IMG/VR virus record: IMGVR_UViG_3300017917_001123
Coordinates: 62,001-126,000 of that record
Strand: one strand, 5' to 3'
Length of the DNA stretch: 64,000 bases
In this document: positions 1,480-16,515 of the stretch, piece by piece
Layout of the letters: each line of letters opens with the position of its first letter
How positions within the stretch are numbered: the first letter of the stretch is position 1
The notes under the pieces: generated by a model
Seen by the model: the letters and a program-made list of their open reading frames with translations, nothing else
Databases searched by the model: none
Told to the model about the DNA's origin: nothing
Program-made: the position numbers and the translations under genes

Positions 1480-4149
1480 ATGAGTTACATCGATGCCATC
1501 TGGGATCGTGACAACGACGTTGTACGTGTCGCTGAACGTGATCCTAAAAAGGGTAGAATCTTCGTAGATTATCCAGCCCGTTATCAATTTTATTACCCCG
1601 ACAATAAAGGAAAGTACAAATCCATTTACGGGGAAAGTCTATCAAAAGTCACTTGTAAAACATTCAAAGACTTTATCAAAGAACAAAAAATCCACTCAAG
1701 TCACAAGCTATACGAAAGCGACATTAACGCTGTGTTTCGTGTGCTTGAAGAAAACTATCTAGGAAAAGATGCTCCGAAACTAAATGTAGCATTTTTCGAT
1801 ATTGAGGTGGACTTCGATCCAGAACGCGGTTACGCATCTCCAGACGATGCGTTCATGCCAATTACTGCGATTGCTGTTCACCTACAATGGTTAGATACAC
1901 TGGTCTGTCTTGCTATTCCTCCAAAGACACTTACAATGGAGCAGGCACAAGAGTTAGTTAAAGATTTTCCTAACACACATCTCTTTGAAAGCGAAGCAGA
2001 GATGCTCGACACTTTCTTAAAGCTAATCGAAGACGCAGATATTCTTAGCGGTTGGAACTCGGAAGGTTTCGATATTCCGTACACCGTTAACCGGGTTACT
2101 AAAGCCTTAAGCAAAGAAGACACACGCAGATTCTGTTTGTTTAATCAATTTCCAAAGAAACGTGAGTACGAAAAATATGGGAAACAAGCTGTTACCTATG
2201 ATCTTGTTGGTCGTGTTCATTTGGACAGTCTCGAGCTGTACCGCAAATACACATACGAAGAACGACACACATATCGACTGGATGCTATTGGAGAGATGGA
2301 AGTAGGCGAAACTAAAACAGTCTACGAAGGCACACTTGACCAACTATACAACAATGACTTTAAAAAGTTTATTGAATATAACAGACAAGACTGTGCGCTA
2401 CTCGATAAACTAGATAAGAAACTAAAATTCATTGACCTAGCAAACGCTATTGCTCATGAAAACACAGTTCTGCTACAAACTACAATGGGTGCTGTAGCAG
2501 TTACTGAACAGGCTATTATCAACGAGGCACATCACCGTGGTATGATTGTTCCAAGTCGTACACGCAAAGACGAGCTTGGCGATACACAGGCCGCAGGTGC
2601 TTATGTTGCTTATCCAAAGAAAGGTCTTCATGACTGGATTGGATCTGTTGATATTAACTCTCTTTATCCGTCTGCGATTCGTGCCTTAAACATGGGACCA
2701 GAGACTATTGTTGGGCAGTTACGTCAAGATTACACCCAAGCAGAAATCGAAGCAAAAATGGCAAAAGGTAATTCTTTTGCGGCGGCTTGGGAAGGCAAAT
2801 TCGGTTCAAACGAATATGAGTTTGTTATGTCGCAAGACAAAGCCAACGACATTGTTGTCGAATGGGAAACTGGCGAAGAAGACATCTTGTCCGGTGCTCA
2901 GATCTATGACTTAATCTTTAATAGTAATCAACCATGGATGCTTTCAGCCAATGGTACAATCTTTACTTACGAAACAGAAGGTATTATTCCAGGCTTGCTC
3001 AAGCGTTGGTATGCTGAACGTAAGGACATGCAGAAAAAACTCAAAGAAGCAATTGACGCAGGTAATAAGATTGAAGAGGAATACTGGGACAAACGTCAGT
3101 TAGTTAAGAAGATTAACTTGAACAGTTTGTACGGTGCTATTCTTAACGCTGGTTGTAGATTCTTCGATAAAAGAATTGGGCAGTCTACTACGCTAGTAGG
3201 TCGTCAAATCTCCAAACACATGGCAAGTAAAATCAACGAAATTATTACAGGCGAATATGATTATCGTGGACGCTCTGTAATTTATGGAGATACTGACTCG
3301 TGTTACTTCTCTGCTTACAGTACACTAAAGAACGATATTGACAAAGGACGTTTGCCTTGGGATAAAGACGTTGCCATCCAACTGTACAACCAGATTGCTG
3401 ATGAAGTAAACGGCACATTCCCACAGTTTATGTTGGATGCGTTCCACTGTCCAAAGAGTCGCGGTGAAGTTATCAAAGCAGGTCGCGAAATTGTTGCGTC
3501 TAAAGGTTTGTTTATTACTAAGAAACGTTATGCTGTTCTTTATTACGATAAAGACGGAAAACGCTACGACACAGATGATAAGCCAGGCAAGATCAAGGCT
3601 ATGGGTCTAGACCTTAAGCGTTCAGATACTCCAGAATTTATGCAGAAGTTCTTGGAAGAAATCTTAACACGAGTCCTAAACGGCGCAGAAGAGCAAGAAG
3701 TGTTAGATCGTATTAGCGAATTCCGCACAGAGTTTAAAGCTCGCCCAGGCTGGGAAAAGGGTTCGCCTAAACGTGCTAACAACATTACAGAGTATGCGGC
3801 TAAGGAAAAGAAACAGGGCAAGGCTAATATGCCAGGTCACGTTCGAGCAAGCCTTAATTGGAATACTCTAAAACAACTTAACGGAGACAAATACTCAATG
3901 GGTATTGTTGACGGTATGAAAGTAATTGTTTGTAAGTTAAAAGATAATCCACTAGGTTATACCTCAGTCGCTTATCCGGTAGACGAACTAAGATTGCCTA
4001 AATGGTTCCAGGAATTACCTTTTGATCATGGCGAGATGGAAGCTACAATCATTAATAATAAACTGGAAAACCTAATCGGTGTGTTGGAATGGGACTTAGA
4101 CTCTACAACACAAAATAATACCTTTGGTAATTTGTTCACATTTGAATAA
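1480..4149 (+). CDS. gp43: family B DNA polymerase (T4 gp43-like)
   Basis: Exonuclease motifs FDIEV, GWNSEGFDIPY, YNRQD; polymerase motifs DINSLYPS, KKINLNSLYG, YGDTDS, KKRY. Confidence 0.97.
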   Translation: MSYIDAIWDRDNDVVRVAERDPKKGRIFVDYPARYQFYYPDNKGKYKSIYGESLSKVTCKTFKDFIKEQKIHSSHKLYESDINAVFRVLEENYLGKDAPKLNVAFFDIEVDFDPERGYASPDDAFMPITAIAVHLQWLDTLVCLAIPPKTLTMEQAQELVKDFPNTHLFESEAEMLDTFLKLIEDADILSGWNSEGFDIPYTVNRVTKALSKEDTRRFCLFNQFPKKREYEKYGKQAVTYDLVGRVHLDSLELYRKYTYEERHTYRLDAIGEMEVGETKTVYEGTLDQLYNNDFKKFIEYNRQDCALLDKLDKKLKFIDLANAIAHENTVLLQTTMGAVAVTEQAIINEAHHRGMIVPSRTRKDELGDTQAAGAYVAYPKKGLHDWIGSVDINSLYPSAIRALNMGPETIVGQLRQDYTQAEIEAKMAKGNSFAAAWEGKFGSNEYEFVMSQDKANDIVVEWETGEEDILSGAQIYDLIFNSNQPWMLSANGTIFTYETEGIIPGLLKRWYAERKDMQKKLKEAIDAGNKIEEEYWDKRQLVKKINLNSLYGAILNAGCRFFDKRIGQSTTLVGRQISKHMASKINEIITGEYDYRGRSVIYGDTDSCYFSAYSTLKNDIDKGRLPWDKDVAIQLYNQIADEVNGTFPQFMLDAFHCPKSRGEVIKAGREIVASKGLFITKKRYAVLYYDKDGKRYDTDDKPGKIKAMGLDLKRSDTPEFMQKFLEEILTRVLNGAEEQEVLDRISEFRTEFKARPGWEKGSPKRANNITEYAAKEKKQGKANMPGHVRASLNWNTLKQLNGDKYSMGIVDGMKVIVCKLKDNPLGYTSVAYPVDELRLPKWFQELPFDHGEMEATIINNKLENLIGVLEWDLDSTTQNNTFGNLFTFE

Positions 4150-4942: not shown

Positions 4943-5319
4943 TAAAAGGCATTACACAATCAGGCAGATATACTGTGGTTAGTGGCGGTACTGCCTCTAA
5001 CCCGTATATTAGCCCAGGAGCAACTGGAGCAGGAATGGTTCGTTGGAATCCCAACATGAGCCAATTAGAAGTAAACGACGGCAATAATTGGCAGTCAATT
5101 GCAATGAGCTTTGCTAGCGTTGGATTAACTTCAGAAGCAGAGAGCATTTTAGATTGGGCAAGAAATAAAATGCGTGAAGAATTTGAAATGAAGGCTCTTG
5201 CCGAACAACATCCTGCTGTCAAGATTGCTCTAGAAAACCTAAATAAAGCACAAGAACAACTTAAGGCAACAGTAATATTAAGCAAGGATTATCAATCGAA
5301 TGAAGAAACCACCACTTAA
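4939..5319 (+). CDS. hypothetical protein
   Basis: ATGA coupling; 126-aa ORF. Confidence 0.7.
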   Translation: MIKGITQSGRYTVVSGGTASNPYISPGATGAGMVRWNPNMSQLEVNDGNNWQSIAMSFASVGLTSEAESILDWARNKMREEFEMKALAEQHPAVKIALENLNKAQEQLKATVILSKDYQSNEETTT

Positions 5320-6919
5320 CTTAACACCTCTACAGAAAGACTATGCTGTCTATTTGCCGGCTATTAGTTCTTTCTACGAGAACTATATCTCTAAGCAAAG
5401 ACTTGGGGAGTTTATTTCTACTGATCGTATCCCTAAAGGATTTGATCGCGGTATCGAAGGCATGAACTTCTTAAACGAAGAACAAGGATATTTTACATAT
5501 CGTTATGCTTTGTATTCCGCAGGTCACGCACAACTGGATCTGGAAAAAGCAATAGATCAAGAGTCTATGATTCAACAACGACAAAGAAATAGTACAGTTA
5601 TTGTCGGCGACTCCGGTGGATACCAGATTGGTAAAGGTGTTCTTAAGTTTGATTGGCTAAACTTTGAAGGTGCCGAAGCTAATAAGACTCGTCAAAAGAT
5701 TCTCGAGTGGTTGGAAATGACTGCTGATTGGTCAATGATGCTAGACGTTCCAACTTGGGCCTGTGACCACATTCATAGTCCAAAGACTGGATTAAAAACA
5801 TTTGAAGACTGTCTAGACAAGACACGTTTCAATAACGATTACTTCCTTAAGAATCGTTTAGGCCAAACAAAGTGGCTTAACGTTCTACAGGGTAGTGACT
5901 GGGATACTGCTGAAAAGTGGTATCAAGGCGTAAAAGAATTCAGCGACCCGAATGGTCCATACAAAGGCCGCGAAGCCGAAGGGTGGGCGTTTGGTGGCGC
6001 TAACATGTGTAAAATGGATATTACTCTAAAGCGATTAATGACGCTTAGAGAAGATGGTTTGCTGAAAGGCAAAAACTGGATCCACTTCCTGGGTACAGCA
6101 CAGTTAGATTGGTCATGCTATCTAACACTTATTCAACGTCAAATTAGGAAGCACATTAATGAAGAAATTACCATCTCTTTTGATTGCGCCTCACCGTTTA
6201 TCGCAACAGCGCACGGACTCGTCTACACAAATGCCCAACACACCAACAAACGTTGGTCGGTTATTATGGACAAAGCACCAGATAACAAAGCACTTGCAGG
6301 AGCAGATATCCCGTTCCCATTCGAGTCAGAGTTCGGTCGCAGACTAACAATGGGCGATATTGCCTATTACGATCTAGGTGTTAGAAAGTCTGATGCTGAA
6401 TTAAATGGTGCTAAGTTTGATCACTTGAATCCAGATCACTATCATGTTGTTCCTAAAATTAACAAGCTAGGTAAGATTCCCAATAAAACAAGTTGGGATA
6501 GTTTTAGCTATGCTTTAATGATGGGTCATAACGTTGAATGCCATATTGTTGCTGTACAACGTGCCCAACAATTAATGGATATCGAATGTGCTAGATTTAA
6601 ACCAGACTGGCGTCATTGGGGTATCGAAGGTAAGAAAGAAAAAGAATTTAGCGACTGGGTTCCACGCAGAATTCTATACTTTGCTACATTTGTTGAAGAG
6701 TTATTCAATACCAAAACAAAAGCAGAAGCATTTGACTTAATTGAATCTGCTTTACCACTTCTTCGTAGTTTAGAAGGTGCTCGACTACAAGGTGGTCCTG
6801 CTCAAAATACATTTGGTAGTTTGTTTGAGGTCGAAGAAGTTCGTCAAGAAGAAATTGATTTCGCAAGTCCAGATGATGACGAACTAAGAGCACTCGAAGA
6901 AGAACTAAAAGATCAGTAA
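5300..6919 (+). CDS. dpdA: TGT-family 7-deazaguanine DNA transglycosylase (DpdA-type)
   Basis: TGT barrel motifs in order: GDSGGYQ (catalytic Asp), MLDVP, NVLQG, WAFGG, WIHFLG, SFDCASP (nucleophile Asp), terminal GHN. Clustered with folE, queE and a queD paralogue. Confidence 0.85.
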   Translation: MKKPPLNLTPLQKDYAVYLPAISSFYENYISKQRLGEFISTDRIPKGFDRGIEGMNFLNEEQGYFTYRYALYSAGHAQLDLEKAIDQESMIQQRQRNSTVIVGDSGGYQIGKGVLKFDWLNFEGAEANKTRQKILEWLEMTADWSMMLDVPTWACDHIHSPKTGLKTFEDCLDKTRFNNDYFLKNRLGQTKWLNVLQGSDWDTAEKWYQGVKEFSDPNGPYKGREAEGWAFGGANMCKMDITLKRLMTLREDGLLKGKNWIHFLGTAQLDWSCYLTLIQRQIRKHINEEITISFDCASPFIATAHGLVYTNAQHTNKRWSVIMDKAPDNKALAGADIPFPFESEFGRRLTMGDIAYYDLGVRKSDAELNGAKFDHLNPDHYHVVPKINKLGKIPNKTSWDSFSYALMMGHNVECHIVAVQRAQQLMDIECARFKPDWRHWGIEGKKEKEFSDWVPRRILYFATFVEELFNTKTKAEAFDLIESALPLLRSLEGARLQGGPAQNTFGSLFEVEEVRQEEIDFASPDDDELRALEEELKDQ

Positions 6920-7497
6920 TGAACTTTATAGCAGAATACCAATTGAGCGACACAACTGTTTGTGACGCTCTTTTGGAACTTTTTAAACAAGCACATCAAC
7001 AAGGTTTTACCAAACCTGGTATAGTTGGGTTTGGAACAAAAGAAACTCCAGAAGTAAAGCGTAGCACAGATCTTTACTTGCCAGACGCTGACAGTTTGGG
7101 CTCTCCTGCTAATTTTCGTTTTCCGGAATATAACAACGATTTAACCAAATTCATTGACAATTATTGTATAGAGCGTAAAATATATAACTACTGCGGAAAA
7201 TTTGAAATGCGCTATGCGCCACAAATACAATGGTACAAACCAGAGGAAGGTTTTTATCAGTGGCATATAGATGGAGGTCAAGAACTTTGCGAAAGAGCTT
7301 TAGTTTTTTTAACTTATCTGAATGATGTTGAAGACGGTGGAACTGAATTCTTAAATCAAAACTTAACTGTTAAAGCAGTTAAGGGTAAGACAATTATTTT
7401 TCCAACTGGACTTACACATATACATCGCGGACAAGTTTCAAAAACTCAAGACAAATATATTTTAACTGGCTGGCTTTATTGGGATAACACAAAGTAA
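6919..7497 (+). CDS. 2OG-Fe(II) oxygenase (prolyl-4-hydroxylase-like)
   Basis: WHID...YLNDVEDGGTEF...HIHRG...KYILTGW (HxD...H facial triad, 2OG-binding Lys); TAATG-coupled to dpdA. Confidence 0.9.
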   Translation: MNFIAEYQLSDTTVCDALLELFKQAHQQGFTKPGIVGFGTKETPEVKRSTDLYLPDADSLGSPANFRFPEYNNDLTKFIDNYCIERKIYNYCGKFEMRYAPQIQWYKPEEGFYQWHIDGGQELCERALVFLTYLNDVEDGGTEFLNQNLTVKAVKGKTIIFPTGLTHIHRGQVSKTQDKYILTGWLYWDNTK

Positions 7498-7498
7498 T

Positions 7499-8026
7499 AT
7501 GAAAAGAGATTATACTATTGGCACCGCAGAAGACATTACGTTTTTTACCGGAGTAGAAGTCGAAAAAACTCCTGCTTTTGGTAAACGTACTTTGTTTGTT
7601 GTAGGTCTACAGGACCCGCATATTATCATTCATCTTGCCAAAGATAATAATTGCGACCATATCTATTTTGGTGCTAACCAAAGTTTTCCTAAACTCGAAG
7701 TAAATGATGCCAGCAATTGGCGAGAATGGGAAGATATGATTGTCGATTGTATCGAAGCAGGCTTCTTGTGTACGCTAGATCTTGATGTTTCACAAGTAGA
7801 GGGCCTGGTAGAAGGGCGTCTGGTAGAATACCGAAACTTTATTCCGCAAATTTCGGTGAAAGTGCCCTATTTACAACAGCTAGGATATAATGCTACAATT
7901 AAGCTAGACGACATTGATTTTAACGCAACTAATCATGGCGTTTGGTGTCATATGCTTCACGATCTAACTAAGCGTAAAAACTTTACAAGCTGGAATGAAT
8001 ACGGTAAGGATGAAATTATCAAATGA
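7499..8026 (+). CDS. hypothetical protein in the deazaguanine cluster
   Basis: 175-aa alpha/beta ORF (TLFVVG, HIYFGAN, CTLDLD, TIKLDD, GVWCH); ATGA-coupled to the next gene. Confidence 0.75.
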   Translation: MKRDYTIGTAEDITFFTGVEVEKTPAFGKRTLFVVGLQDPHIIIHLAKDNNCDHIYFGANQSFPKLEVNDASNWREWEDMIVDCIEAGFLCTLDLDVSQVEGLVEGRLVEYRNFIPQISVKVPYLQQLGYNATIKLDDIDFNATNHGVWCHMLHDLTKRKNFTSWNEYGKDEIIK

Positions 8027-8463
8027 GTCAAGAAAAAACACAAAGAGTTATGGATCAGGCCCAACGTCAAATCTGGGTAACCTTTCGCAAAGAAGGCATT
8101 CACAAATATCCTGCGGCCGCAACGGACCCCGCACTAGCAACCGGAGACGAATATGATGTTTCGTTCCTTGGTGTTCCTCATCGTCATATCTTCCATTTCC
8201 GGGTGTGGATTGATGTGTTCCACAATGACCGGGACATCGAATTCATCCAATTCAAACGTTGGCTCGAGAACCTGTATAATGGTCAAGGTGCCGTATTAGA
8301 ACTAAATTATAAGTCATGCGAGATGATCGCAGATGACTTATATCAGCAGATTACTTTGCGATATCCAGATCGCAACGTAAGCATTGAGGTAGCCGAGGAC
8401 GGCGAGAACGGATGCCTCATTCATTATAACCTTTCTCGCCCGTATCAAACTCTTTCTATTTAA
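8023..8463 (+). CDS. QueD-like T-fold protein of DpdL type (proposed CDG decarboxylase)
   Basis: H(KYP)...LGVPHRHIF = LxxxHRHxF in place of the QueD CxxxHGH; SCEM and C-terminal AEDGENG are the T-fold Glu positions. Confidence 0.75.
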   Translation: MSQEKTQRVMDQAQRQIWVTFRKEGIHKYPAAATDPALATGDEYDVSFLGVPHRHIFHFRVWIDVFHNDRDIEFIQFKRWLENLYNGQGAVLELNYKSCEMIADDLYQQITLRYPDRNVSIEVAEDGENGCLIHYNLSRPYQTLSI

Positions 8464-8474: not shown

Positions 8475-8699
8475 ATGTCGCAACCAAAGTGGCTCGACAA
8501 ATATCTGGTTATGAAACCAGAAGTCAACAAGATCTTCGACGATCTTGAAGCATGGCACGATCATTGCCGTTTTGAAATGATCAACTTCAATCCGGCAGAC
8601 TTGTACAAGTCTAGGGAGTACAAGGAGTTTGCCAATAAGGGCAAGCGCCGTTTCCACAACTACAACGGATCGAAGCCATACCGTAAATTCAACCAATGA
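8475..8699 (+). CDS. hypothetical protein
   Basis: SD AAGGA; 74 aa; ATGA overlap with the glycosyltransferase. Confidence 0.65.
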   Translation: MSQPKWLDKYLVMKPEVNKIFDDLEAWHDHCRFEMINFNPADLYKSREYKEFANKGKRRFHNYNGSKPYRKFNQ

Positions 8700-9778
8700 C
8701 AGTATTCTTAGTAGACTTAGAAGCTGTTGAAACTAGGTACACTGGTCAGTGGAAGACTTGGGTACCTAGTCTTCTTAAAAAGGCGGGACACGATGTCACA
8801 GTTATCTCTGGACCTACTGACATTCCTAACAGTACCACTCCTGGTGCTTTTCTCAATTTTGGTGGTACAAATATATACAAAGCGAGACAAGTTGAGGAAT
8901 TTAGTAGGCTATTTTGCGCCGGAACAGTTAAGCCTGGCGATCATTTTCTGTTTACTGATGCTTGGCATCCTGGCATCACGAATCTAAAATACATGAGCGA
9001 GCTTCTTAACATACCTGTTAAGATTCACGCATTATGGCATGCTGGTAGTTACGATCCTCAAGACTTCCTAGGTCGTCTAATCGGAGATGCTCCTTGGGTT
9101 AGACACGCCGAAAAGAGTTTCTTCGAGTCAATCGATCACAACTATTTTGCTACAGACTTTCACATCGACATGTTCTTACATAATCTGCTCGACTTAGGTC
9201 GTTTTGCAGATAAAGAAATTGTCTTTGAAATGTTCAATACAGGAAAGATTGTACGTACTGGATGGCCAATGGAATATATGGAAGATACACTCTTAGACTA
9301 TAAAAATATGCCTAAGCGTGATTTGATTCTATTCCCGCATCGTATAGCACCCGAGAAGCAAGTTGAGATTTTTAGAGATCTCAAAGAACAGCTACCACAA
9401 TACGAATTTATTGTGTGTCAGGATCAACAGCTAACAAAGAATGAGTATCATAATTTGTTAGGCGAGTCGAAGTTGGTATTCAGTGCGAACTTACAAGAAA
9501 CCCTAGGTATTAGTTGGTACGAAGGTGCCATTGTAGATGCTATTCCTATGGTTCCAGATCGTCTAAGCTATTCAGAAATGGCATTTGATACATTTAAGTA
9601 TCCTAGTGAATGGACTGAAAGTTATGACGCCTATCTCAAACATAGACAAGAAATCTGCTTTAAGATAATCCAGTATATGGACAATTACGATCATATGTTA
9701 CCTATGCTTCGTAAGCAGACAGCTTATCTAACAGAAAACTTTTTTAGTGCTACAAAACTATTGGAAAATATAAAATGA
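8696..9778 (+). CDS. GT-B (GT4-like) glycosyltransferase
   Basis: FPHRIAPEK donor-binding loop; E-x7-E motif (QETLGISWYEG); VPDRLSYSE; two-domain length of 360 aa. Confidence 0.85.
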   Translation: MTVFLVDLEAVETRYTGQWKTWVPSLLKKAGHDVTVISGPTDIPNSTTPGAFLNFGGTNIYKARQVEEFSRLFCAGTVKPGDHFLFTDAWHPGITNLKYMSELLNIPVKIHALWHAGSYDPQDFLGRLIGDAPWVRHAEKSFFESIDHNYFATDFHIDMFLHNLLDLGRFADKEIVFEMFNTGKIVRTGWPMEYMEDTLLDYKNMPKRDLILFPHRIAPEKQVEIFRDLKEQLPQYEFIVCQDQQLTKNEYHNLLGESKLVFSANLQETLGISWYEGAIVDAIPMVPDRLSYSEMAFDTFKYPSEWTESYDAYLKHRQEICFKIIQYMDNYDHMLPMLRKQTAYLTENFFSATKLLENIK

Positions 9779-10557
9779 AGATTGGAATCGTCGGCGCCGG
9801 ATTTGTAGGTGGCGCAGTTAAAAATGCCTACGATACGTTTCAAGTACCTGTTTTGGTACACGATCCTGTTAAAGGATTTGTTGCCAGCTGGGAAGAACTT
9901 AAAACCTGTGATGGCGTTTATGTCTGCGTCCCTAGTCCCACTTCCGATACCGGCGAGTGCGATACAAGTATCTTAGAAGATGTTCTTAAAAATCTAGCAG
10001 GTATGGAAGGTGTTATTATTAGTAAAGTAACAGCACCTCCGGGTGTTTATTCTAAACTACAAGTAATCTACCCTAATCTAGTTCACGCACCAGAGTTTCT
10101 TGTTGCGGCAACTGCTAACGAAGATTATATCAATGGTACTTTTGCCTACATCGGCGGTGCTGAAGAATATTGTCAAAAGGCTGAAGCAGTTATCCGTGCT
10201 AGCCAACCAAGTTTGACAGATGTTACTTACTGTACCATTACCGAAGCAAGCCTAGCAAAATACACCATTAACAGTTTCCTAGCTACTAAGGTTGTGTTTA
10301 TGAATCAAATTTATGATCTAGCACAGCAACTAGGTGTAAACTTTAACTCGCTAACCAACATGCTTCTAAGCGAAAAGCGTTTTGGCAACAGTCACATGCG
10401 TGTTCCTGGTCCAGACGGAAGCAGAGGTTTTGGCGGAGCATGTTTTCCTAAAGATACTGCCGCACTAGTCTATGAAGCAGAAAGAGCAGGAGTTGATTTT
10501 TCCTTACTTAAGAGTGCTATCAGTGCTAATAAAAAGCTACGCGGCCTTGACAAGTAA
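9775..10557 (+). CDS. UDP-glucose/GDP-mannose 6-dehydrogenase-family protein lacking the C-terminal domain
   Basis: GxGxxG (GAGFVG), CVPSP, KVTAPPG, PEFL, EASLAKY, GFGGACFPKD (catalytic Cys); ends at 260 aa. Confidence 0.88.
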   Translation: MKIGIVGAGFVGGAVKNAYDTFQVPVLVHDPVKGFVASWEELKTCDGVYVCVPSPTSDTGECDTSILEDVLKNLAGMEGVIISKVTAPPGVYSKLQVIYPNLVHAPEFLVAATANEDYINGTFAYIGGAEEYCQKAEAVIRASQPSLTDVTYCTITEASLAKYTINSFLATKVVFMNQIYDLAQQLGVNFNSLTNMLLSEKRFGNSHMRVPGPDGSRGFGGACFPKDTAALVYEAERAGVDFSLLKSAISANKKLRGLDK

Positions 10558-10615: not shown

Positions 10616-11311
10616 ATGAGTGAAAAAAATTTAGCGCAAGCAATTAGAGAAAACATGAGACGCAACGGAAAGCGTTTCTGGGCTGGCGACAATATCAGCG
10701 AATACGTAGACGAAAATGTTCTCCCCGAACTGGTAGACGAAGCAACAGAAGCGTTTGAAAAAGTGTTGGATGCGTTGTTAATTGATCGCGAAACAGATCC
10801 TAATAGTAAGGGCACAGCACGTAGACTGGCCAAAATGTACTTTAACGAAATAATGGCAGGAAGATATGCCCCAGCACCAGACGCAACAAGTTTCCCTAAC
10901 GATTCGGAGGACCGCTACGAAGGTATGTTGGTTGTTCGCAGTGAGCTTCGCAGTATGTGTAGCCATCATCACCAACCCGTTACTGGTGTTGCCTATATTG
11001 GTATTATTGCGGCTCAACACCTCATTGGCCTCTCTAAGTACACAAGGATTGCCCAATGGTGCGCCCGACGTGGTACTCTCCAGGAGGAACTTGCTAATGA
11101 TATTGCTCGCGAGATCGCCAAAGCCACAGGAGCAAAAGACCTAGGAGTTTATATTCAAGCCACGCATGGTTGCTGTGAAAATCGTGGCATTATGGCACAT
11201 AGTTCTTTAACACAAACAACTGTATTACGTGGTGCGTTTAAAGATGATCCAGGCACAAAGAAGGAATTCTTTGACAACATTAAACTCCAACAAGAGTTTG
11301 CTCCAAGATAA
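10616..11311 (+). CDS. folE: GTP cyclohydrolase I
   Basis: SMCSHHHQP, IGLSKYTRI, LQEEL, HGCCENRG (Zn ligands Cys/His/Cys). Confidence 0.95.
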   Translation: MSEKNLAQAIRENMRRNGKRFWAGDNISEYVDENVLPELVDEATEAFEKVLDALLIDRETDPNSKGTARRLAKMYFNEIMAGRYAPAPDATSFPNDSEDRYEGMLVVRSELRSMCSHHHQPVTGVAYIGIIAAQHLIGLSKYTRIAQWCARRGTLQEELANDIAREIAKATGAKDLGVYIQATHGCCENRGIMAHSSLTQTTVLRGAFKDDPGTKKEFFDNIKLQQEFAPR

Positions 11312-11711: not shown

Positions 11712-11929
11712 ACCCAGATAGCGTTATGTACGAAATGTTTGACGGATACGTTACTATGTCGTCCGTTGATGCTCAACATGAGTGGATGAACCGATATCGT
11801 ATTGACGCTATCCGGATGGGCCGTATGTGTGAAAAGTTCCCAGCTTTACAAAAGTCATGGGACGATTTTAAATTAATCTACGAAATTTGCCGGAGTCAAG
11901 ATGACATCGATCGACAAACTCATAATTAA
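11708..11929 (+). CDS. hypothetical protein
   Basis: GTGA overlap; SD GGAGG. Confidence 0.65.
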   Translation: MNPDSVMYEMFDGYVTMSSVDAQHEWMNRYRIDAIRMGRMCEKFPALQKSWDDFKLIYEICRSQDDIDRQTHN

Positions 11930-12458
11930 CCAATCTCACTTTAACAGTCTTGTAAGTAAAATTTGCAGAGACATTACTGTTAGTGGTTGGAGACCTGACT
12001 ACATTGTTGGAATTACACGGGGAGGTCTTCTCCCTGCTCTTATGATGAGTCACTACTTTAATGTCCCGTTACATACACTAAATGTAAGTCTACGAGATAA
12101 TACAAATATAGGACCTGAATCAAATTTATGGATGGCCGAGGATGCGTTCGGTTACGATAGCAATCCAGAAACTTCAATTAAATCTAACGCAGATCTTAAA
12201 AAGAAAATTCTTATAGTAGATGACATTAATGATAGCGGAGCAACACTTAACTGGATTATGAAGGATTGGCAGTCTGGATGTTTACCTAATCAAAACGACT
12301 GGAATTATATCTGGAATAATAATGTAAAGTTTGCTGTAATTGTTGATAACCTAGCTAGTAAGTGTGATGTTAAAATGGACTTTGTTGGCATGGAAGTTAA
12401 TAAAGCAGAAAAAGATGTATGGGTTGATTTCCCATACGAGGATTGGTGGACAAAATGA
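11901..12458 (+). CDS. type I purine phosphoribosyltransferase (Gpt-like)
   Basis: IVGITRGGL, PRPP-binding ILIVDDINDSGATL, C-terminal WVDFPYE. Confidence 0.9.
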   Translation: MTSIDKLIINQSHFNSLVSKICRDITVSGWRPDYIVGITRGGLLPALMMSHYFNVPLHTLNVSLRDNTNIGPESNLWMAEDAFGYDSNPETSIKSNADLKKKILIVDDINDSGATLNWIMKDWQSGCLPNQNDWNYIWNNNVKFAVIVDNLASKCDVKMDFVGMEVNKAEKDVWVDFPYEDWWTK

Positions 12459-12658
12459 AATTAGTAAGACCCGGAACACGATGGTGGGATGGCACAAATA
12501 AAAGGTTTCTCGTACTCGCTGTAGTCGAAACAGACGATGGACATACATGGGTACATTACAGAGAAGACAAAGGAATAAAAACTCCAGCAACGGACTGTAA
12601 AGAATATAGCTGTTACATTGAGAGTTTTGAACAAAGATTTAGAAGCTTACCAGAATGA
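12455..12658 (+). CDS. small hypothetical protein (DUF1653-like pattern)
   Basis: ATGA overlap with the PRTase stop; all-beta pattern ending FEQRF. Confidence 0.55.
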   Translation: MKLVRPGTRWWDGTNKRFLVLAVVETDDGHTWVHYREDKGIKTPATDCKEYSCYIESFEQRFRSLPE

Positions 12659-13026
12659 CAAGATTAGAAGGATTCGTACAAAAGGGTTGGGGACACGAAT
12701 TAATTTGGTGTACCACTGACAAATACTGTGGCAAACTTTTGAAATTTAACAAAGGTGCCAAATTCAGTATGCACTTCCATGCTGAAAAAGATGAGACTTG
12801 GTTTGTCCTAGATGGCAAGTTCGAAGTGAAGTTTATCGACACTAAAGACGCACATCAAGGAAGCGCAATTCTTAATCCAGGTGATACGTGGCATAATCCG
12901 CCACTATTCCCACATCAAGTTATTTGTCTAGAAGAAGGTACTATCATCGAAGTTAGTACGCCCGATTCAATTCAAGACAACTATCGAGTAATGCCCGGAG
13001 ATAGTCAACGTGAGAGTAATGGTTAA
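12655..13026 (+). CDS. cupin (sugar-phosphate isomerase-like)
   Basis: KGWGHE, SMHFHAEKDETW, HNPPLFPHQ, EVST. Confidence 0.85.
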   Translation: MTRLEGFVQKGWGHELIWCTTDKYCGKLLKFNKGAKFSMHFHAEKDETWFVLDGKFEVKFIDTKDAHQGSAILNPGDTWHNPPLFPHQVICLEEGTIIEVSTPDSIQDNYRVMPGDSQRESNG

Positions 13027-13411
13027 CGGCACCTTTGATATTGTCCATAGAGGACATATCGAACTACTAAACTACGCAAAAAGTCAAGGCGATTTTTTGC
13101 TAGTTGCCATTGATACAGATCGTAGAGTTAAAGAACTCAAAGGAGAAAAACGTCCTATTAATAATCAATGGGACAGGTGGTTTTTGCTTGATAACCTACG
13201 AGCTGTAGATACTGTTAGATTTTTTGATAGTAAAGAAGAGCTAATAGAGATAATGAAAGAATACAAACCAGATGTCTACGTTAAGGGCGGGGATTGGAAA
13301 CGAGACAAGCCTGGTACAGCAGAACAATATTGTGATAAAGTAATTTACTATGACAGAGTCGGTTCATATTCAACAACCAAAACCATTGACGATATTATTA
13401 ATCGGGGATGA
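13010..13411 (+). CDS. nucleotidyltransferase, HldE/RfaE domain II-like
   Basis: NGTFDIVHRGH (HxGH), KG..RPIN, VKGGDW, STT. Confidence 0.88.
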   Translation: MRVMVNGTFDIVHRGHIELLNYAKSQGDFLLVAIDTDRRVKELKGEKRPINNQWDRWFLLDNLRAVDTVRFFDSKEELIEIMKEYKPDVYVKGGDWKRDKPGTAEQYCDKVIYYDRVGSYSTTKTIDDIINRG

Positions 13412-14120
13412 TTGCCTCGACGTCTACCAATTCGGTAGCGTAGATCGCATTTCGCCCGAGGCGCCTGTTCCCGTCTTTAAGTACGGGCGGAATGAAACTG
13501 TAGGCGGAATGGCACGTAACGTGAAGCGCAATCTAGAAGAACTAGGTTGTATTGTTACTTACATGTGCGGACAAACAAGTGTTAAGACACGCCTTATCGA
13601 CCAAAGATCAAAACAACATGTTCTCCGCGTAGACAACGACAATCGCAGTCAACCCCTATTATTTGAAGACATTCCATTCAACCTAAATAGTGCTAATCTA
13701 GATGCTATTGTAGTGTCTGACTATGACAAAGGTTATGTTAGTTACGAACTAATCGAAAAACTAATTGCTAATTTTAAAGGACCTGTATTTGTTGATACAA
13801 AGAAAACAGACTTAAAGCGATTAGAAGGCGCATACATTAAAATCAATGAGCTCGAGTATAGTAAATTGATTACTAAATGCTCAGGAATTATTGTTACACT
13901 AGGAGAAAAGGGTGCTCGTTACAACGACGTAATTGTGCCGGCTCCTAAGGTAGAAGTTAGTGATGTTTGCGGAGCAGGAGATACCTTTTTATCTGCTCTC
14001 ACATATAGATATTGCCTAAGTAAAGATATTATAGATGCTATGGAATTTGCGGTTAAGGCAAGCTCTATAACAGTACAGCATCTAGGAAATTACGCACCAG
14101 CGTTAGGAGAATTAAAATGA
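13350..14120 (+). CDS. PfkB sugar kinase, HldE/RfaE domain I-like
   Basis: GDDCLD..RISPEAPVP, GGMARNV, VSDYDKG, KINE, DVCGAGDTF. Confidence 0.9.
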   Translation: MTESVHIQQPKPLTILLIGDDCLDVYQFGSVDRISPEAPVPVFKYGRNETVGGMARNVKRNLEELGCIVTYMCGQTSVKTRLIDQRSKQHVLRVDNDNRSQPLLFEDIPFNLNSANLDAIVVSDYDKGYVSYELIEKLIANFKGPVFVDTKKTDLKRLEGAYIKINELEYSKLITKCSGIIVTLGEKGARYNDVIVPAPKVEVSDVCGAGDTFLSALTYRYCLSKDIIDAMEFAVKASSITVQHLGNYAPALGELK

Positions 14121-14446
14121 AATTTGGTGGATGGGATGTAGGCGGAAAAGTTGTTAAACAAAGTGACGTCTACACAGTAAAAGATAATACAGCATTAAAA
14201 AATTTAATCGTTAGTTCAACAACACTACATCCGGGCAAGAGTACATCCGGGCATAGCCACGCAGGCCAAGAAGAAGTTTATCAATTTATTCGAGGCCAAG
14301 GAAAGATGACTTTAGATAATGAGACCTTTAATGTCTACCCAGGTGATGTAGTGTTAATTCAAGACGGGGTGTTTCATCGTGTTCATAACACCGGACATGA
14401 AGACATGTACTTTGTTTGTGTTTTTGATGGGAAGAGGAATCACTAA
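14117..14446 (+). CDS. cupin domain protein
   Basis: GHSHAGQEEVY...GDVVLI..GVFHRV. Confidence 0.85.
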   Translation: MKFGGWDVGGKVVKQSDVYTVKDNTALKNLIVSSTTLHPGKSTSGHSHAGQEEVYQFIRGQGKMTLDNETFNVYPGDVVLIQDGVFHRVHNTGHEDMYFVCVFDGKRNH

Positions 14447-14856
14447 TGTTTAAACAAGACAATCATATTTTTAAAGGCATACCGGACGATATCGAGGATA
14501 GCAAGGCTCCGTGGACTGAACTTATTGCTGAAGACTATCATGTAAAAGTTTTCAAAGACAAATATCCCTGTACGCCCGGGCACTTGTTGTACGTGCCTAA
14601 ATATAACACCTTAGGAGTTTTAAGCGATGCGTTTGAAGATGCTGTTAGATACGGTAAGACAATGGTGGAAGCCGGAGAATGGGACGGTTTCAATGTTGGA
14701 CTTAACTATGGCGAAAGCGCAGGTCAAACTGTGCCTTGGCCTCATATTCATCTTATCCCGCGCAGAAACGGCGACGTCAAAGATCCGATCGGCGGTGTTC
14801 GAAACACGATCCCGGGCAAAGGAAACTATCGCTCTCCGGACTATTCAAACGATTAA
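14446..14856 (+). CDS. HIT family nucleotide hydrolase
   Basis: DKYP..PGHLLYVPK, AGQTVPWPHIHLIPR (first triad His replaced by Trp). Confidence 0.85.
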   Translation: MFKQDNHIFKGIPDDIEDSKAPWTELIAEDYHVKVFKDKYPCTPGHLLYVPKYNTLGVLSDAFEDAVRYGKTMVEAGEWDGFNVGLNYGESAGQTVPWPHIHLIPRRNGDVKDPIGGVRNTIPGKGNYRSPDYSND

Positions 14857-15223: not shown

Positions 15224-15384
15224 TGCAAGTAAGAGCTTCAGCAGATGTAGGTAAGTGCGGTTGCGGTCGTAGCCCAACTGGTAAATGTATCGGATGGCAT
15301 GGCCTAACCGAAGACGAGTTTAAGAAAAAACTCGAGGAATATAAACTTACTGAACAAAAAGCTACAGGAACTCCAAGTGAGTAA
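15223..15384 (+). CDS. CDGSH/NEET-type [2Fe-2S] miniprotein (53 aa, absent from the ORF track)
   Basis: MQVRASADVGKCGCGRSPTGKCIGWHGLTEDEFKKKLEEYK...; C-x-C-x2-S-x4-C-x-G-x-H; SD AGGAG; TAATG coupling; overlaps the queE start. Confidence 0.75.
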   Translation: MQVRASADVGKCGCGRSPTGKCIGWHGLTEDEFKKKLEEYKLTEQKATGTPSE

Positions 15385-16234
15385 AATCAAAGTCGCAGAG
15401 CTGTTTTACAGCATACAAGGAGAAGGACGCTTTATGGGCGTTCCTTCTGTCTTCTTACGTACATTTGGTTGTAATTTTACATGTGCCGGATTTGGCATGC
15501 CAAGAGGAGAACGAAGTGTTGAAGCAGAAAATATTGACGCATCTAAGTACACCGAGTACAAATCGCTTCCTTTGGTATCTACAGGTTGTGATAGTTACGC
15601 TTCTTGGGATCCTCGCTTTAAGCATCTATCTCCCCTTCTGGATACTACTGCGATTGCCGATGCTATTGTGGATACGTTACCTTACAAGGAATGGCGGGAC
15701 GAACATCTCGTAATTACAGGTGGCGAGCCTTTGCTAGGTTGGCAACGTGCTTATCCAGACTTGCTTAATCATCCTAAGATGACTAGCTTAAAAGAGCTAA
15801 CTTTTGAAACAAACGGTACAATGCGTTTGACAAAAGATTTTAGACATTTCTTGCTAGACTGGACACTAAGCCCAGTTCATGGTCGAAGAGGTTACAATGC
15901 CCTTACATTTAGTGTAAGCGCAAAACTTCCTTGCTCAGGCGAACCGTGGGAAGATGCTATTAAGCCAGAAGTTGTTTGTGACTACGAACAGGTTGGTTAC
16001 ACATACCTTAAGTTTGTTATTGCTTCAGAACAAGACGCACTAGATGCCGATCGTGCCGTAGAAGAATATCGCAAGGCAGGATTCAACGGTCCTATCTATC
16101 TAATGCCAGTCGGCGGCGTTGAAAGCGTTTATGCTCTTAACAATCGTCGTGTAGCAGATCTCGCTATGAAGAAGGGCTATAGATATTCCGATAGATTACA
16201 AGTTCCGCTCTTTAAAAACGAGTGGGGAACTTAA
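15377..16234 (+). CDS. queE: 7-carboxy-7-deazaguanine synthase (radical SAM)
   Basis: ELFYSIQGEG, FLRTFGCNFTC...GCDS, VITGGEPL, FETNGT, LKFVI, YLMP, RLQ. Confidence 0.92.
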   Translation: MSKIKVAELFYSIQGEGRFMGVPSVFLRTFGCNFTCAGFGMPRGERSVEAENIDASKYTEYKSLPLVSTGCDSYASWDPRFKHLSPLLDTTAIADAIVDTLPYKEWRDEHLVITGGEPLLGWQRAYPDLLNHPKMTSLKELTFETNGTMRLTKDFRHFLLDWTLSPVHGRRGYNALTFSVSAKLPCSGEPWEDAIKPEVVCDYEQVGYTYLKFVIASEQDALDADRAVEEYRKAGFNGPIYLMPVGGVESVYALNNRRVADLAMKKGYRYSDRLQVPLFKNEWGT

Positions 16235-16515
16235 TGTCAGGGTTCGCATCAAAGCGACAGATGGGGTTAAGCAGAATGAGTGACGAAGTTCAAGGAAGTC
16301 CTCGATCACAAGATTGGGGACTACAAAAAGCCAGAGGATGGAAGTTAAAGTTTTGCTGGCGTCCTAATACTTGTTTTCTAACAGGACAGCAACTATGGGG
16401 AAAGAAAGCATACCACGGTATTCGTATGATTACTGGACCCGGCGAGCCAGTCTTTGAAAATTACTGGATTGCCAAAGATGAATTTATTTTATGGAATTTA
16501 AAAGGTCGATGCTAG
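16234..16515 (+). CDS. hypothetical protein
   Basis: TAATG coupling to queE. Confidence 0.6.
   Translation: MSGFASKRQMGLSRMSDEVQGSPRSQDWGLQKARGWKLKFCWRPNTCFLTGQQLWGKKAYHGIRMITGPGEPVFENYWIAKDEFILWNLKGRC

What the first reader, a model, noticed from the sequence alone, without database searches (positions are those of the whole stretch)
8023..8463. The only QueD-like gene is DpdL-type (LxxxHRHxF) and QueC is absent: points to unsubstituted 7-deazaguanine
Seen: LGVPHRHIF replaces the catalytic CxxxHGH, and the window has no canonical queD or queC. Established (from memory of the phage deazaguanine literature): LxxxHRHxF marks DpdL, proposed to decarboxylate CDG to 7-deazaguanine. Inference: the route is FolE, then host or distal QueD, QueE, DpdL, DpdA. 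Alternatively this protein itself performs the QueD step by a Cys-independent mechanism, which would revise the DpdL assignment.
Basis: partly seen in the sequence, partly recalled or inferred. Interest (0 to 1): 0.6.

Follow-up and report, generated by a model that had tools for sequence, protein, structure and literature searches.

The report
DpdL-type deazaguanine gene in jumbo phage
This gene is a genuine member of the phage DpdL family, a QueD look-alike thought to make 7-deazaguanine for swapping into phage DNA.

Summary
**Observation.** ORF 8023-8463 (+) encodes a 146-aa protein with LGVPHRHIF. It is a real DpdL-family protein:
- 51.5% identical to the ACP17 DpdL and 34% to the phiST DpdL.
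- AF2 model pLDDT 92.8; the best PDB match is E. coli QueD.
- It keeps the three Zn-histidines and two glutamates of QueD. Cys27 is replaced by Leu and the Asp-His pair is missing.

**Genome inventory.** The window is part of a 331.6-kb jumbo phage.
- A canonical QueD (CxxxHGH) lies outside the window, at genome 26712-27263. "Only QueD-like gene" therefore holds for the window alone, and the idea that DpdL does the QueD step is unnecessary.
- FolE, QueE and a TGT-fold DpdA-like protein are in the window.
- No QueF and no canonical QueC were found. The only QueC-like item is a weak PP-loop protein 170 kb away.

**Complication.** DpdL is flanked by a 175-aa unknown partner, which is fused to DpdL elsewhere. 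A GT4-like glycosyltransferase with sugar-nucleotide genes follows it. That transferase follows DpdL in 60 of 60 related loci and sits inside the ACP17, PA5oct and X1 operons. phiST, the only phage with measured dDG, lacks it.

**Verdict.** The DpdL assignment is sound. "Unsubstituted" 7-deazaguanine is unproven and doubtful.

The parts
8023..8463 (+). DpdL-family protein (146 aa, P0001): QueD-like T-fold with LGVPHRHIF in place of CxxxHGH
   Evidence: Translation. tblastn to ACP17 DpdL 51.5% / 1e-35 and phiST DpdL 34% / 1e-8. phrog_17812 8e-35. AF2 pLDDT 92.8 with best PDB match E. coli QueD 4ntk, prob 1.0, TM 0.62/0.73. Residue mapping to QueD.
7499..8026 (+). 175-aa protein of unknown function (P0272). 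Its stop overlaps the DpdL start. Conserved partner of DpdL.
   Evidence: Present upstream of DpdL in 70 of 80 related loci. Homologues in PA5oct and, inside the ACP17 operon, between FolE and the DpdA-like gene. Fused N-terminally to a DpdL domain in P0173 (BLASTP 1e-9). No Pfam, PHROG, NCBIfam or PADLOC hit.
5300..6919 (+). DpdA-like transglycosylase (539 aa), TGT fold, subfamily not assigned
   Evidence: AF2 pLDDT 85.7. All top 50 PDB matches are tRNA-guanine transglycosylases (E about 1e-6, prob 1.0). BFVD matches are phage TGT/DpdA proteins, including the phiST 259-aa protein at E 3.6e-4. Invariant DSGG.Q and SFDCASP motifs in 64 homologues. Atlas features nearest a PF01702 cluster. No Pfam TGT hit.
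8696..9778 (+). GT4-like (GT-B) glycosyltransferase (360 aa, P0273), conserved neighbour of DpdL
   Evidence: Atlas features 0.99-1.00 to Glycos_transf_1 clusters. ExxxxxxxE at 268-276, kept as [E/D]x7E in 71-72 of 72 homologues. A homologue lies downstream of DpdL in 60 of 60 related loci and inside the operons of ACP17, PA5oct, X1 and contig L096.
9775..10557 (+). Nucleotide-sugar dehydrogenase-like protein (260 aa), short: only the central part of the family is present
   Evidence: Pfam UDPG_MGDP_dh central domain 1.6e-21. TIGR03026 120.8 bits over profile positions 71-295 of 413.
10616..11311 (+). GTP cyclohydrolase I (FolE), first step to the deazapurine
   Evidence: Pfam PF01227 8e-39. 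Only copy in the genome.
11901..12458 (+). Type I phosphoribosyltransferase, weakly closest to 6-oxopurine PRTases
   Evidence: Pfam Pribosyltran 1e-12. Weak NCBIfam hits to xanthine and hypoxanthine-guanine PRTases, 25-28 bits, far below cut-off.
12655..14856 (+). Sugar-nucleotide-type gene set: cupin, HldE-domain-II-like adenylyltransferase (13010-13411), HldE-domain-I-like sugar kinase (13350-14120), cupin (14117-14446), HIT protein (14446-14856)
   Evidence: TIGR02199 119.8 bits, TIGR02198 141.5 bits, Cupin_2, HIT.
15377..16234 (+). QueE-like radical-SAM 7-carboxy-7-deazaguanine synthase
   Evidence: phrog_2076 'QueE-like' 4.3e-51 over the full length. N-terminal QueE NCBIfam hits of about 45 bits.
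6919..7497 (+). 2OG-Fe(II) oxygenase between the DpdA-like gene and P0272. Not conserved in relatives, so probably an accessory insert.
   Evidence: Pfam 2OG-FeII_Oxy_3 1.3e-10. 0 of 80 related loci have it.
1480..4149 (+). Family-B DNA polymerase. It marks the replication-gene context of the module.
   Evidence: phrog_262 1.6e-197. Conserved upstream in 68 of 80 loci.

Best explanation
The gene encodes a DpdL-family enzyme, a paralogue of QueD (6-carboxytetrahydropterin synthase).

**What the protein keeps and has lost.** It keeps the T-fold, the three zinc-binding histidines (H27, H53, H55) and the two glutamates that hold a pterin or purine ring (E100, E125). It has lost the catalytic cysteine (Leu49) and the Asp-His pair. 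It is therefore not the QueD of this phage.

**How the pathway runs.** The phage makes 7-carboxy-7-deazaguanine (CDG) itself. It uses FolE and QueE from this window and a canonical QueD encoded 43 kb upstream. It has no QueF and no canonical QueC, so it cannot go on to preQ0 or preQ1.

**Inferred steps.** DpdL most likely acts on the free CDG base. The published proposal is a metal-assisted decarboxylation to 7-deazaguanine. The neighbouring TGT-fold DpdA-like enzyme then exchanges the product for guanine in phage DNA after replication, which protects the DNA from restriction.

**What is shown and what is not.** Shown here: family membership, fold, residue pattern and gene inventory. Inferred: the substrate, the reaction and the DNA product.

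**Lineage-specific partners.** In this lineage DpdL never stands alone. A 175-aa unknown protein lies directly upstream, and a GT4-like glycosyltransferase with sugar-nucleotide genes lies directly downstream. Both are conserved partners. The DNA base is therefore probably 7-deazaguanine-derived but not necessarily left unsubstituted.
For: - **Motif and translation:**
- **Homology to the two named DpdL proteins:** ACP17 51.5% / 1e-35 and phiST 34% / 1e-8; profile hits.
- **Family size and motif conservation:** 2043 representatives; LxxxHRHxF in 119 of 132. Near-invariant H27, L49, H53, R54, H55, F57, E100, E125.
- **Fold:** AF2 pLDDT 92.8; best PDB matches are E. coli QueD, then PTPS, QueF-like and dihydroneopterin aldolases.
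- **Residue mapping to E. coli QueD:** H16, H31, H33, E86 and E110 are kept. C27 becomes L. The DHH segment is absent.
- **Definition of DpdL and its proposed reaction:** PMC10516641.
- **Pathway genes:** FolE; QueE; canonical QueD elsewhere in the genome; no QueF; no TIGR00364 QueC.
- **DpdA-like TGT fold:**
- **The same pattern in relatives:** 4 related jumbo phages and PA5oct all have a PTPS gene over cut-off and no QueC over cut-off.
- **Link to a free queuosine-precursor base:** a DpdL domain is fused to a YhhQ/Vut_1 transporter (P0199, 31.6 bits).
- **Evidence of a modified G in a relative:** PA5oct carries the same DpdA-like, GT and DpdL trio. [quoted passage not shown]
Against: - No DpdL has been shown to decarboxylate CDG. 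Co-expressing dpdL and dpdA from phiST or from ACP17 in E. coli gave no dDG (PMC10516641). ACP17 is the closest named relative of this protein.
- The only phage with measured dDG, phiST, has a DpdL only 34% identical. It also lacks the glycosyltransferase that is invariably linked to DpdL here.
- DpdL domains are fused elsewhere to a PIG-L/LmbE-like amidohydrolase, a PAPS-reductase-like PP-loop domain, a dUTPase-like domain and the P0272 family. A simple one-step decarboxylase role does not explain these fusions.
- Pfam PTPS does not detect the protein. A PDB sequence-profile search gave only sub-significant T-fold hits.
- A weak QueC-like protein exists in the genome.
Confidence: 0.6

Rival explanations
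1. DpdL decarboxylates CDG, DpdA inserts plain 7-deazaguanine, and the DNA carries unsubstituted dDG as in phiST. The glycosyltransferase and sugar genes next door serve another target, such as virion proteins or the host envelope.
For: - The gene set FolE, QueD, QueE, DpdL, DpdA without QueC or QueF matches the published definition of dDG phages.
- phiST DNA contains dDG (PMC10516641).
- 7-Deazaguanine offers no obvious hydroxyl for a sugar (chemistry, my own knowledge).
- Several DpdL phages (phiST, RHph_I1_18, Bakedbeans, Ahp1) manage without the transferase.
Against: - The transferase follows DpdL on the same strand in 60 of 60 related loci, at a median distance of 0.5 kb.
- It lies between or beside dpdA and dpdL in ACP17, PA5oct, X1 and contig L096, which are otherwise very different phages.
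- ACP17 dpdL plus dpdA alone gave no dDG.
Confidence: 0.35
2. A sugar-bearing or otherwise extended 7-deazaguanine. DpdL, the 175-aa partner and the GT4-like transferase work in one pathway. The guanine replacement in DNA, or its free-base precursor, is decorated with a sugar supplied by the adjacent, lineage-variable sugar-nucleotide cassette.
For: - Universal DpdL-transferase linkage, with the [E/D]x7E motif intact.
- The variable cassette between DpdL and FolE in relatives holds an NAD epimerase/dehydratase, a DegT-like protein, a sugar C-methyltransferase and a B12 radical-SAM enzyme.
- Here the cassette holds HldE-like kinase and adenylyltransferase, cupins, a HIT protein and an NDP-sugar dehydrogenase-like protein.
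- A PIG-L/LmbE-like domain is fused to DpdL, or encoded in the same operon in X1.
- A distant homologue of the transferase sits next to a BshB-type deacetylase and GlmS in PhiXhv-12.
- The genome has no ThyA-family hydroxymethylase that could provide another acceptor base.
Against: - No acceptor group is evident on 7-deazaguanine or CDG other than the carboxylate or ring nitrogens.
- No such base was found in my searches of the held papers.
- All the evidence is gene neighbourhood and fusions. The transferase fold was not modelled. Its Pfam hits are below cut-off.
Confidence: 0.3
3. The protein is itself the CPH4 synthase and works without the cysteine.
For: It has the QueD-like fold, the retained zinc histidines and the ring-binding glutamates.
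Against: - A canonical QueD with CxxxHGH is encoded in the same genome and in all 5 relatives checked. It is also present in ACP17, phiST and RHph_I1_18 next to DpdL.
- The Cys and the Asp-His pair are both missing.
- QueD is reported to be inactive without the Cys (PMC10516641).
Confidence: 0.03
4. A nucleotide-level or salvage route. The deazapurine base made with DpdL's help is coupled to PRPP by the nearby purine-type phosphoribosyltransferase and enters DNA as a nucleotide. Alternatively, DpdL processes precursors imported from the host (preQ0, ADG, CDG).
For: - A type I PRTase with weak 6-oxopurine PRTase similarity lies 0.6 kb downstream of FolE.
- DpdL is fused to a YhhQ-type precursor transporter and to a dUTPase-like domain.
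- From memory: toyocamycin and tubercidin pathways use PRTases on deazapurine bases.
Against: - A DpdA-like base-exchange enzyme is conserved right beside DpdL.
- The PRTase was detected in only 6 of 26 relatives with enough flank. It could equally recycle the guanine released by base exchange.
- The phage encodes its own FolE, QueD and QueE, so salvage is not required.
Confidence: 0.1

Closest known systems
DpdL of Cellulophaga phage phiST (CGPG_00067 / gp040), the founding member; proposed CDG decarboxylase (Hutinet et al. 2023, PMC10516641)
   Same: - QueD-like T-fold and LxxxHRHxF motif.
- Co-occurs with FolE, QueD, QueE and a DpdA, without QueC.
- Detected by tblastn (34%, 1e-8) and by the family profile (6.6e-24).
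   Different: - Only 34% identical.
- The phiST module has a MazG, an ATPase and a 259-aa DpdA3. It has no P0273-type glycosyltransferase anywhere in the genome and no P0272 homologue in the 14-kb locus scanned.
- phiST DNA was measured (dDG). This phage's DNA was not.
DpdL of Acidovorax phage ACP17 (ASD50405) and the homologue EST35_0318 of Pseudomonas jumbo phage PA5oct
   Same: - 51-52% identity.
- Same extended module: DpdA-like, GT4-like transferase, DpdL and QueE, with FolE and QueD in the same operon in ACP17.
- A P0272-like gene lies inside the ACP17 operon, and about 26 kb from dpdL in PA5oct.
   Different: - The ACP17 DpdA-like protein is 424 aa and too diverged for the profile of the 539-aa protein.
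- PA5oct has HFH instead of HRH.
- The sugar-nucleotide genes differ.
- The bases in the DNA of these phages are also unknown. PA5oct DNA resists G-containing restriction sites.
QueD, 6-carboxy-5,6,7,8-tetrahydropterin synthase (E. coli, PDB 4ntk)
   Same: Fold (Foldseek prob 1.0, TM 0.62/0.73). The three Zn histidines and two glutamates are kept.
   Different: - Cys27 becomes Leu49.
- The Asp-His segment is missing.
- Arg replaces Gly in HGH.
- About 18% identity.
- No Pfam PTPS hit.
- A true QueD is present elsewhere in the genome.
DpdA / tRNA-guanine transglycosylase superfamily (for the partner at 5300-6919)
   Same: TGT TIM-barrel fold. DSGG.Q and FDC-type motifs. Adjacent to deazaguanine synthesis genes.
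   Different: 539 aa with a long C-terminal helical extension. No hit to Pfam TGT or to PADLOC Dpd models. Subfamily (DpdA1-4) not assignable here.
GT4 transferase plus LmbE-type deacetylase pairs (BshA/BshB, MshA/MshB) and phage DNA glucosyltransferases of T-even phages. These are analogies for the linked transferase, recalled from memory.
   Same: GT-B/GT4-type signature [E/D]x7E. Pairing with PIG-L/LmbE-like domains in related modules. A lineage-variable sugar supply, as in T-even DNA glycosylation.
   Different: No hydroxymethyl-pyrimidine pathway in this genome. The acceptor is unknown. No PIG-L or PAPS-reductase gene was detected in this genome.

Membership tests
DpdL (phage QueD paralogue, proposed CDG decarboxylase) | QueD-like T-fold | tested here: met
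   AF2 pLDDT 92.8. Best PDB matches are E. coli QueD 4ntk and PTPS, prob 1.0.
DpdL (phage QueD paralogue, proposed CDG decarboxylase) | Signature LxxxHRHxF in place of CxxxHGH | tested here: met
   LGVPHRHIF at residues 49-57. It aligns with KCGRLHGH of E. coli QueD. Conserved in 119 of 132 representatives.
DpdL (phage QueD paralogue, proposed CDG decarboxylase) | Three histidines and two glutamates shared with QueD | tested here: met
   H27, H53, H55, E100 and E125 align with QueD H16, H31, H33, E86 and E110. All are at least 90% conserved.
DpdL (phage QueD paralogue, proposed CDG decarboxylase) | Sequence homology to the named DpdL proteins of phiST and ACP17 | tested here: met
   tblastn 34% / 1e-8 and 51.5% / 1e-35. 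The family profile hits both.
DpdL (phage QueD paralogue, proposed CDG decarboxylase) | Genome encodes DpdA, FolE, QueD and QueE but not QueC | tested here: met
   No TIGR00364 and no QueF. Caveat: a 235-aa PP-loop protein scores 23.7 bits on Pfam QueC, C-terminal part only.
DpdL (phage QueD paralogue, proposed CDG decarboxylase) | Converts CDG to 7-deazaguanine | not testable with these tools
   Never shown for any member. The heterologous tests in PMC10516641 were negative.
QueD / PTPS (CPH4 synthase) | Catalytic Cys in CxxxHGH | tested here: not met
   Leu49 occupies the Cys27 column.
QueD / PTPS (CPH4 synthase) | Match to the curated family model (Pfam PF01242, TIGR03367) | tested here: not met
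   No Pfam hit at E up to 10 and no NCBIfam hit. The genome's real QueD scores 92 bits.
DpdA / TGT superfamily (partner at 5300-6919) | TGT TIM-barrel fold | tested here: met
   All top 50 PDB matches are TGT. Phage DpdA/TGT models in BFVD also match.
DpdA / TGT superfamily (partner at 5300-6919) | Catalytic aspartates of TGT | tested here: inconclusive
   Invariant D104 in DSGG.Q and D295 in SFDCASP resemble the TGT motifs. The mapping to Z. mobilis Asp102 and Asp280 is from memory and was not checked residue by residue.
DpdA / TGT superfamily (partner at 5300-6919) | Exchanges guanine in DNA for a 7-deazaguanine | not testable with these tools
   Needs biochemistry or DNA mass spectrometry.
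GT4-type (GT-B) glycosyltransferase (partner at 8696-9778) | ExxxxxxxE signature and family-model match | tested here: inconclusive
   E268-x7-E276 is present and conserved. Atlas features 0.99-1.00 to Glycos_transf_1 clusters. Pfam hits appear only in homologues and below cut-off. Fold not modelled.
QueC (for the 235-aa protein at genome 241846-242553) | Full-length match to QueC models | tested here: not met
   Pfam QueC 23.7 bits over profile positions 136-207 only. TIGR00364 gives none. No phage or PDB QueC relative.

The most novel reading that the evidence does not exclude
In this abundant aquatic jumbo-phage lineage, and in ACP17, PA5oct and X1, DpdL is one step of a longer pathway. The 175-aa partner and the conserved GT4-like transferase with its swappable sugar-nucleotide cassette would turn the CDG-derived base into a sugar-bearing 7-deazaguanine in DNA. 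That would be a guanine counterpart of the glycosylated hydroxymethyl-pyrimidines of T-even phages. In that case DpdL might not be a simple decarboxylase.
Probability: 0.3. Interest if true: 0.8.

Novelty: new variant of a known kind. Interest (0 to 1): 0.5.

Why it matters
DpdL is a named but biochemically unproven enzyme. The only published attempts to reconstitute it failed, and the authors suggested that other enzymes might be missing.

This locus and its many relatives point to concrete candidates: a 175-aa protein that is sometimes fused to DpdL, and a glycosyltransferase that follows DpdL in every related locus examined.

If these proteins act together, the DNA of a very common group of aquatic jumbo phages may carry a guanine modification not yet described. 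The same would apply to the therapeutic-candidate phage PA5oct. Such a modification would bear on restriction evasion, on defence systems that sense modified DNA, and on how such DNA can be sequenced.

If they do not act together, the locus is simply one more predicted dDG phage.

Tried and rejected
- **Family scans of the DpdL protein:** Pfam, NCBIfam and PADLOC gave no hit. Only an unnamed PHROG matched.
- **PDB sequence searches:** the single sequence and the 78-sequence profile gave only sub-significant hits (bacterioferritin at 0.04, PH0634 PTPS at 0.14, aldolases at 0.6). I did not use them.
- **hhalign of the DpdL profile against the single QueD sequence:** uninformative.
- **Supplementary tables of PMC10516641:** not held, so I could not read the ACP17 DpdA accession or the DpdA subfamily.
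- **P0272 family:**
  - The profile search of the big protein collection returned over 6,600 unnamed proteins without Pfam domains.
  - The PDB profile hits to designed 'Cake' repeat proteins are a repeat artefact.
- **Complex prediction of DpdL with P0272:** no verdict (score 0.00). It counts neither for nor against binding.
- **QueC-like PP-loop protein:** I considered it as a hidden QueC and set it aside. The match is partial, there is no TIGR00364 hit, and there are no phage or PDB relatives. It lies in a radical-SAM cluster 170 kb away, and the relatives lack it.
- **Hydroxymethyl-pyrimidine acceptor for the transferase:** the genome has no ThyA-family gene.
- **PIG-L and PAPS-reductase partners seen in other DpdL modules:** not found in this genome.
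- **Read laying:** not used, because short-read data would not reveal the base chemistry.
Full report
**1. The observation**

ORF 8023-8463 on the + strand is open and encodes 146 residues with LGVPHRHIF at positions 49-57.

- In a six-frame scan of the whole genome, LxxxHRHxF occurs in one real ORF (this one) and in one 44-aa antisense frame. CxxxHGH occurs in one real ORF, and that ORF is not in the window.
- The window is bases 62001-126000 of a 331,570-bp virus record. CheckV estimates it as 93% complete.
- One pond metagenome run holds the region almost completely and may be the source sample.

**2. What the protein is**

*Sequence and family*
- Curated libraries do not recognise it (Pfam, NCBIfam, PADLOC). 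It matches unnamed phrog_17812 at 8e-35.
- tblastn against GenBank phages finds 28 records. They include the two phages whose genes were named DpdL by Hutinet et al. 2023: ACP17 at 51.5% / 1e-35 and phiST at 34% / 1e-8. The PA5oct group (52%) and Sinorhizobium phage Phosso (64%) are also found.
- That paper defines DpdL as a QueD paralogue in which CxxxHGH has become LxxxHRHxF. It occurs in phages with DpdA, FolE, QueD and QueE but no QueC, and it is proposed to decarboxylate CDG.
- The paper also reports that co-expressing dpdL and dpdA from phiST or ACP17 in E. coli gave no dDG.
- The family is large: 2043 representatives of 50%-identity clusters at E <= 1e-3. The motif is L...HRH.F in 119 of 132 motif-bearing representatives.

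*Fold and active-site residues*
- An AlphaFold2 model built on 78 homologues has pLDDT 92.8.
- Its best PDB matches are E. coli QueD (4ntk, prob 1.0, TM 0.62/0.73). PTPS, QueF-like and dihydroneopterin aldolases follow. Together these define the T-fold.
- I aligned it with E. coli QueD taken from NC_000913.3. QueD H16, H31, H33, E86 and E110 correspond to H27, H53, H55, E100 and E125.
- In the same alignment Cys27 corresponds to Leu49, and the segment holding the Asp-His pair has no counterpart.
- The protein therefore keeps the metal site and the ring-binding site but lacks the groups that QueD uses for catalysis.

**3. Genome inventory**

| Component | Location | Evidence |
|---|---|---|
| FolE | window 10616-11311, only copy | |
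| QueE | window 15377-16234 | phrog_2076 4e-51, |
| Canonical QueD (CRHLHGH) | genome 26712-27263, outside the window | Pfam PTPS 92 bits; |
| QueF | none | |
| QueC equivalog TIGR00364 | none | |
| QueC-like PP-loop protein, 235 aa | genome 241846-242553 | see below |

- The 235-aa protein has an SGGxDS loop and a C-terminal CxxC zinc ribbon. It scores 23.7 bits on Pfam QueC (cut-off 22), but only over the last third of the model.
- It has no relatives among GenBank phages and no PDB QueC match. It sits in a cluster of 15 radical-SAM genes. I do not count it as a QueC, but I cannot exclude that it is one.
- Four related IMG/VR jumbo phages and PA5oct all carry a PTPS-family gene over cut-off. 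None carries a QueC over cut-off.
The alternative of a cysteine-independent QueD is not needed.

**4. The transglycosylase**

- Pfam TGT finds nothing in the genome.
- The 539-aa protein at 5300-6919 carries DSGG.Q and SFDCASP motifs that are invariant in 64 homologues. It folds with pLDDT 85.7.
- All of its top 50 PDB matches are tRNA-guanine transglycosylases.
- In the viral structure library it matches phage TGT/DpdA proteins. One of them is the 259-aa phiST protein, which by gene order is the published DpdA3.
- Language-model features point the same way.

**5. Surroundings and relatives**

*Gene order in the lineage*
- 80 related IMG/VR loci were fetched, with DpdL 67-80% identical to this one. 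At least 600 exist.
- In these loci the order is: DNA polymerase, 272-aa protein, DpdA-like, 175-aa protein, DpdL, a variable stretch of 3-8 kb, FolE, and further on QueE.

*The 175-aa protein (7499-8026)*
- Its stop overlaps the DpdL start.
- It has homologues in PA5oct and inside the ACP17 operon.
- In one metagenomic protein it is fused to the N-terminus of a DpdL domain (1e-9).
- Its function is unknown.

*The glycosyltransferase (8696-9778)*
- The variable stretch always begins with a homologue of this 360-aa protein. All 60 loci with at least 3 kb downstream of DpdL have one, on the same strand, at a median of 0.5 kb.
- The family looks like GT4/GT-B glycosyltransferases. Atlas features score 0.99-1.00 to Glycos_transf_1 clusters. 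Homologues give weak Pfam hits. The [E/D]x7E motif is kept in 71-72 of 72 members.
- The same transferase lies inside the deazaguanine operon of several unrelated phages:
  - ACP17: QueD, FolE, P0272-like, DpdA-like, transferase, DpdL, QueE.
  - PA5oct: DpdA-like, transferase, DpdL.
  - Xanthomonas phage X1: FolE, PAPS-reductase-like, PIG-L-like, x, transferase, DpdA, DpdL, QueE.
  - A T4-like metagenomic contig (L096).
- A profile search finds no such transferase anywhere in phiST, RHph_I1_18, Bakedbeans or Ahp1, with ACP17 as the positive control.

*Sugar-nucleotide genes*
- In relatives the rest of the variable stretch encodes sugar-nucleotide tailoring enzymes. These are an epimerase/dehydratase, a DegT-like protein, a C-methyltransferase and a B12 radical-SAM enzyme.
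- In this window an NDP-sugar dehydrogenase-like gene follows the transferase.
- Between FolE and QueE lie a purine-type PRTase, two cupins, HldE-like adenylyltransferase and kinase, and a HIT protein.

*Other DpdL fusions*
- YhhQ/Vut_1 precursor transporter.
- dUTPase/dCTP-deaminase-like domain.
- PAPS-reductase-like domain (weak).
- PIG-L/LmbE-like domain (weak Pfam). The same domain is a separate gene in the X1 operon at 1e-45.

**6. Mechanism**

*Shown*
- The protein is a DpdL.
- The genome can make CDG, has no QueF and no canonical QueC, and has a TGT-fold partner.

*Inferred*
- DpdL acts on free CDG, most likely by the proposed metal-assisted decarboxylation.
- The DpdA-like enzyme then exchanges the product for guanine in DNA.
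- The PRTase could recycle the displaced guanine.

*Doubtful*
- That the base stays unsubstituted. The only measured dDG phage lacks the transferase, which is obligatorily linked to DpdL here.
- The closest tested relative (ACP17) failed to give dDG with dpdL and dpdA alone.
- The genome has no ThyA-family hydroxymethylase that would give the transferase a pyrimidine acceptor.

*Caveats*
- 7-Deazaguanine has no obvious acceptor group. The sugar reading rests on gene neighbourhood and fusions only.
- PA5oct DNA resists several G-containing restriction sites. This shows that some G modification exists in this type of module, but not which one.

**7. Comparison and novelty**

- The gene is a new member of the known DpdL family.
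- The module differs from the described archetype. It has a long unclassified DpdA-like protein, the P0272 partner and the transferase with a swappable sugar cassette.
- The paper searches I ran did not find this linkage described. I therefore rate the locus as a new variant of a known kind.

**8. Verdict**

| Question | Result |
|---|---|
| Observation | confirmed at the stated coordinates |
| 'Only QueD-like gene' | true of the window only |
| DpdL assignment | supported |
| DpdL acting as QueD | rejected |
| Unsubstituted dDG | possible, about 0.35 |
| Sugar-bearing derivative | about equally possible, about 0.3 |
| Interest | 0.5 |

Noticed in passing
genome G000:C1 about 240,000-271,000 (outside the window; loci L002-L010): A cluster of 15 ORFs scores above the Pfam Radical_SAM cut-off. 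Several are 400-550 aa. A 235-aa PP-loop protein with a QueC-like zinc ribbon (241846-242553) lies among them. No GenBank phage has a relative of that PP-loop protein.
   Followed up: partly
window 34779-48761 (-): A single open frame of 4,660 aa among tail and baseplate-type genes. It is unusually large even for a jumbo phage.
   Followed up: no
window 23762-31451 (-): Four consecutive ORFs of 588-701 aa have similar N-termini. They look like a paralogous set of tail-fibre-type proteins.
   Followed up: no
window 9775-10557 (+): The nucleotide-sugar dehydrogenase-like ORF is only 260 aa and covers profile positions 71-295 of 413. There is no room for the missing C-terminal domain before FolE. 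It may be a truncated or repurposed enzyme.
   Followed up: partly
L011:3817-4293 (ACP17) and L092:4337-4966 (phiST): The annotated QueD proteins of ACP17 and phiST carry CxxxHGY rather than CxxxHGH. The QueD of this genome has the canonical CRHLHGH.
   Followed up: no
L093:9031-9408 (PA5oct EST35_0318): The PA5oct DpdL has HFH instead of HRH in the signature, so the Arg is not universal. PA5oct also has two PTPS-family genes (169215-169715 and 171534-171944).
   Followed up: no
L012-L091, about 0.2-8 kb downstream of DpdL: Closely related phages carry different sugar-tailoring sets after the conserved transferase. These include an epimerase/dehydratase, a DegT-like half-size ORF, an NDP-hexose C-methyltransferase, a B12 radical-SAM enzyme, DUF6071 and SGNH-like proteins. 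It looks like a diversifying cassette.
   Followed up: partly
L098:831-3566 (ENA contig): A DpdL::dUTPase-like fusion lies two genes away from an Amidoligase_2 protein. That family ligates carboxylates to amines, which is suggestive for chemistry on the CDG carboxyl group.
   Followed up: no
window 6919-7497 (+) and 16491-17132 (+): Two 2OG-Fe(II) oxygenase-type genes lie inside the module. Neither was detected in any of the 80 related loci, though the second may lie beyond the flank held for most of them.
   Followed up: partly
window 1-64000: ARAGORN finds no tRNA or tmRNA gene in the window.
   Followed up: yes
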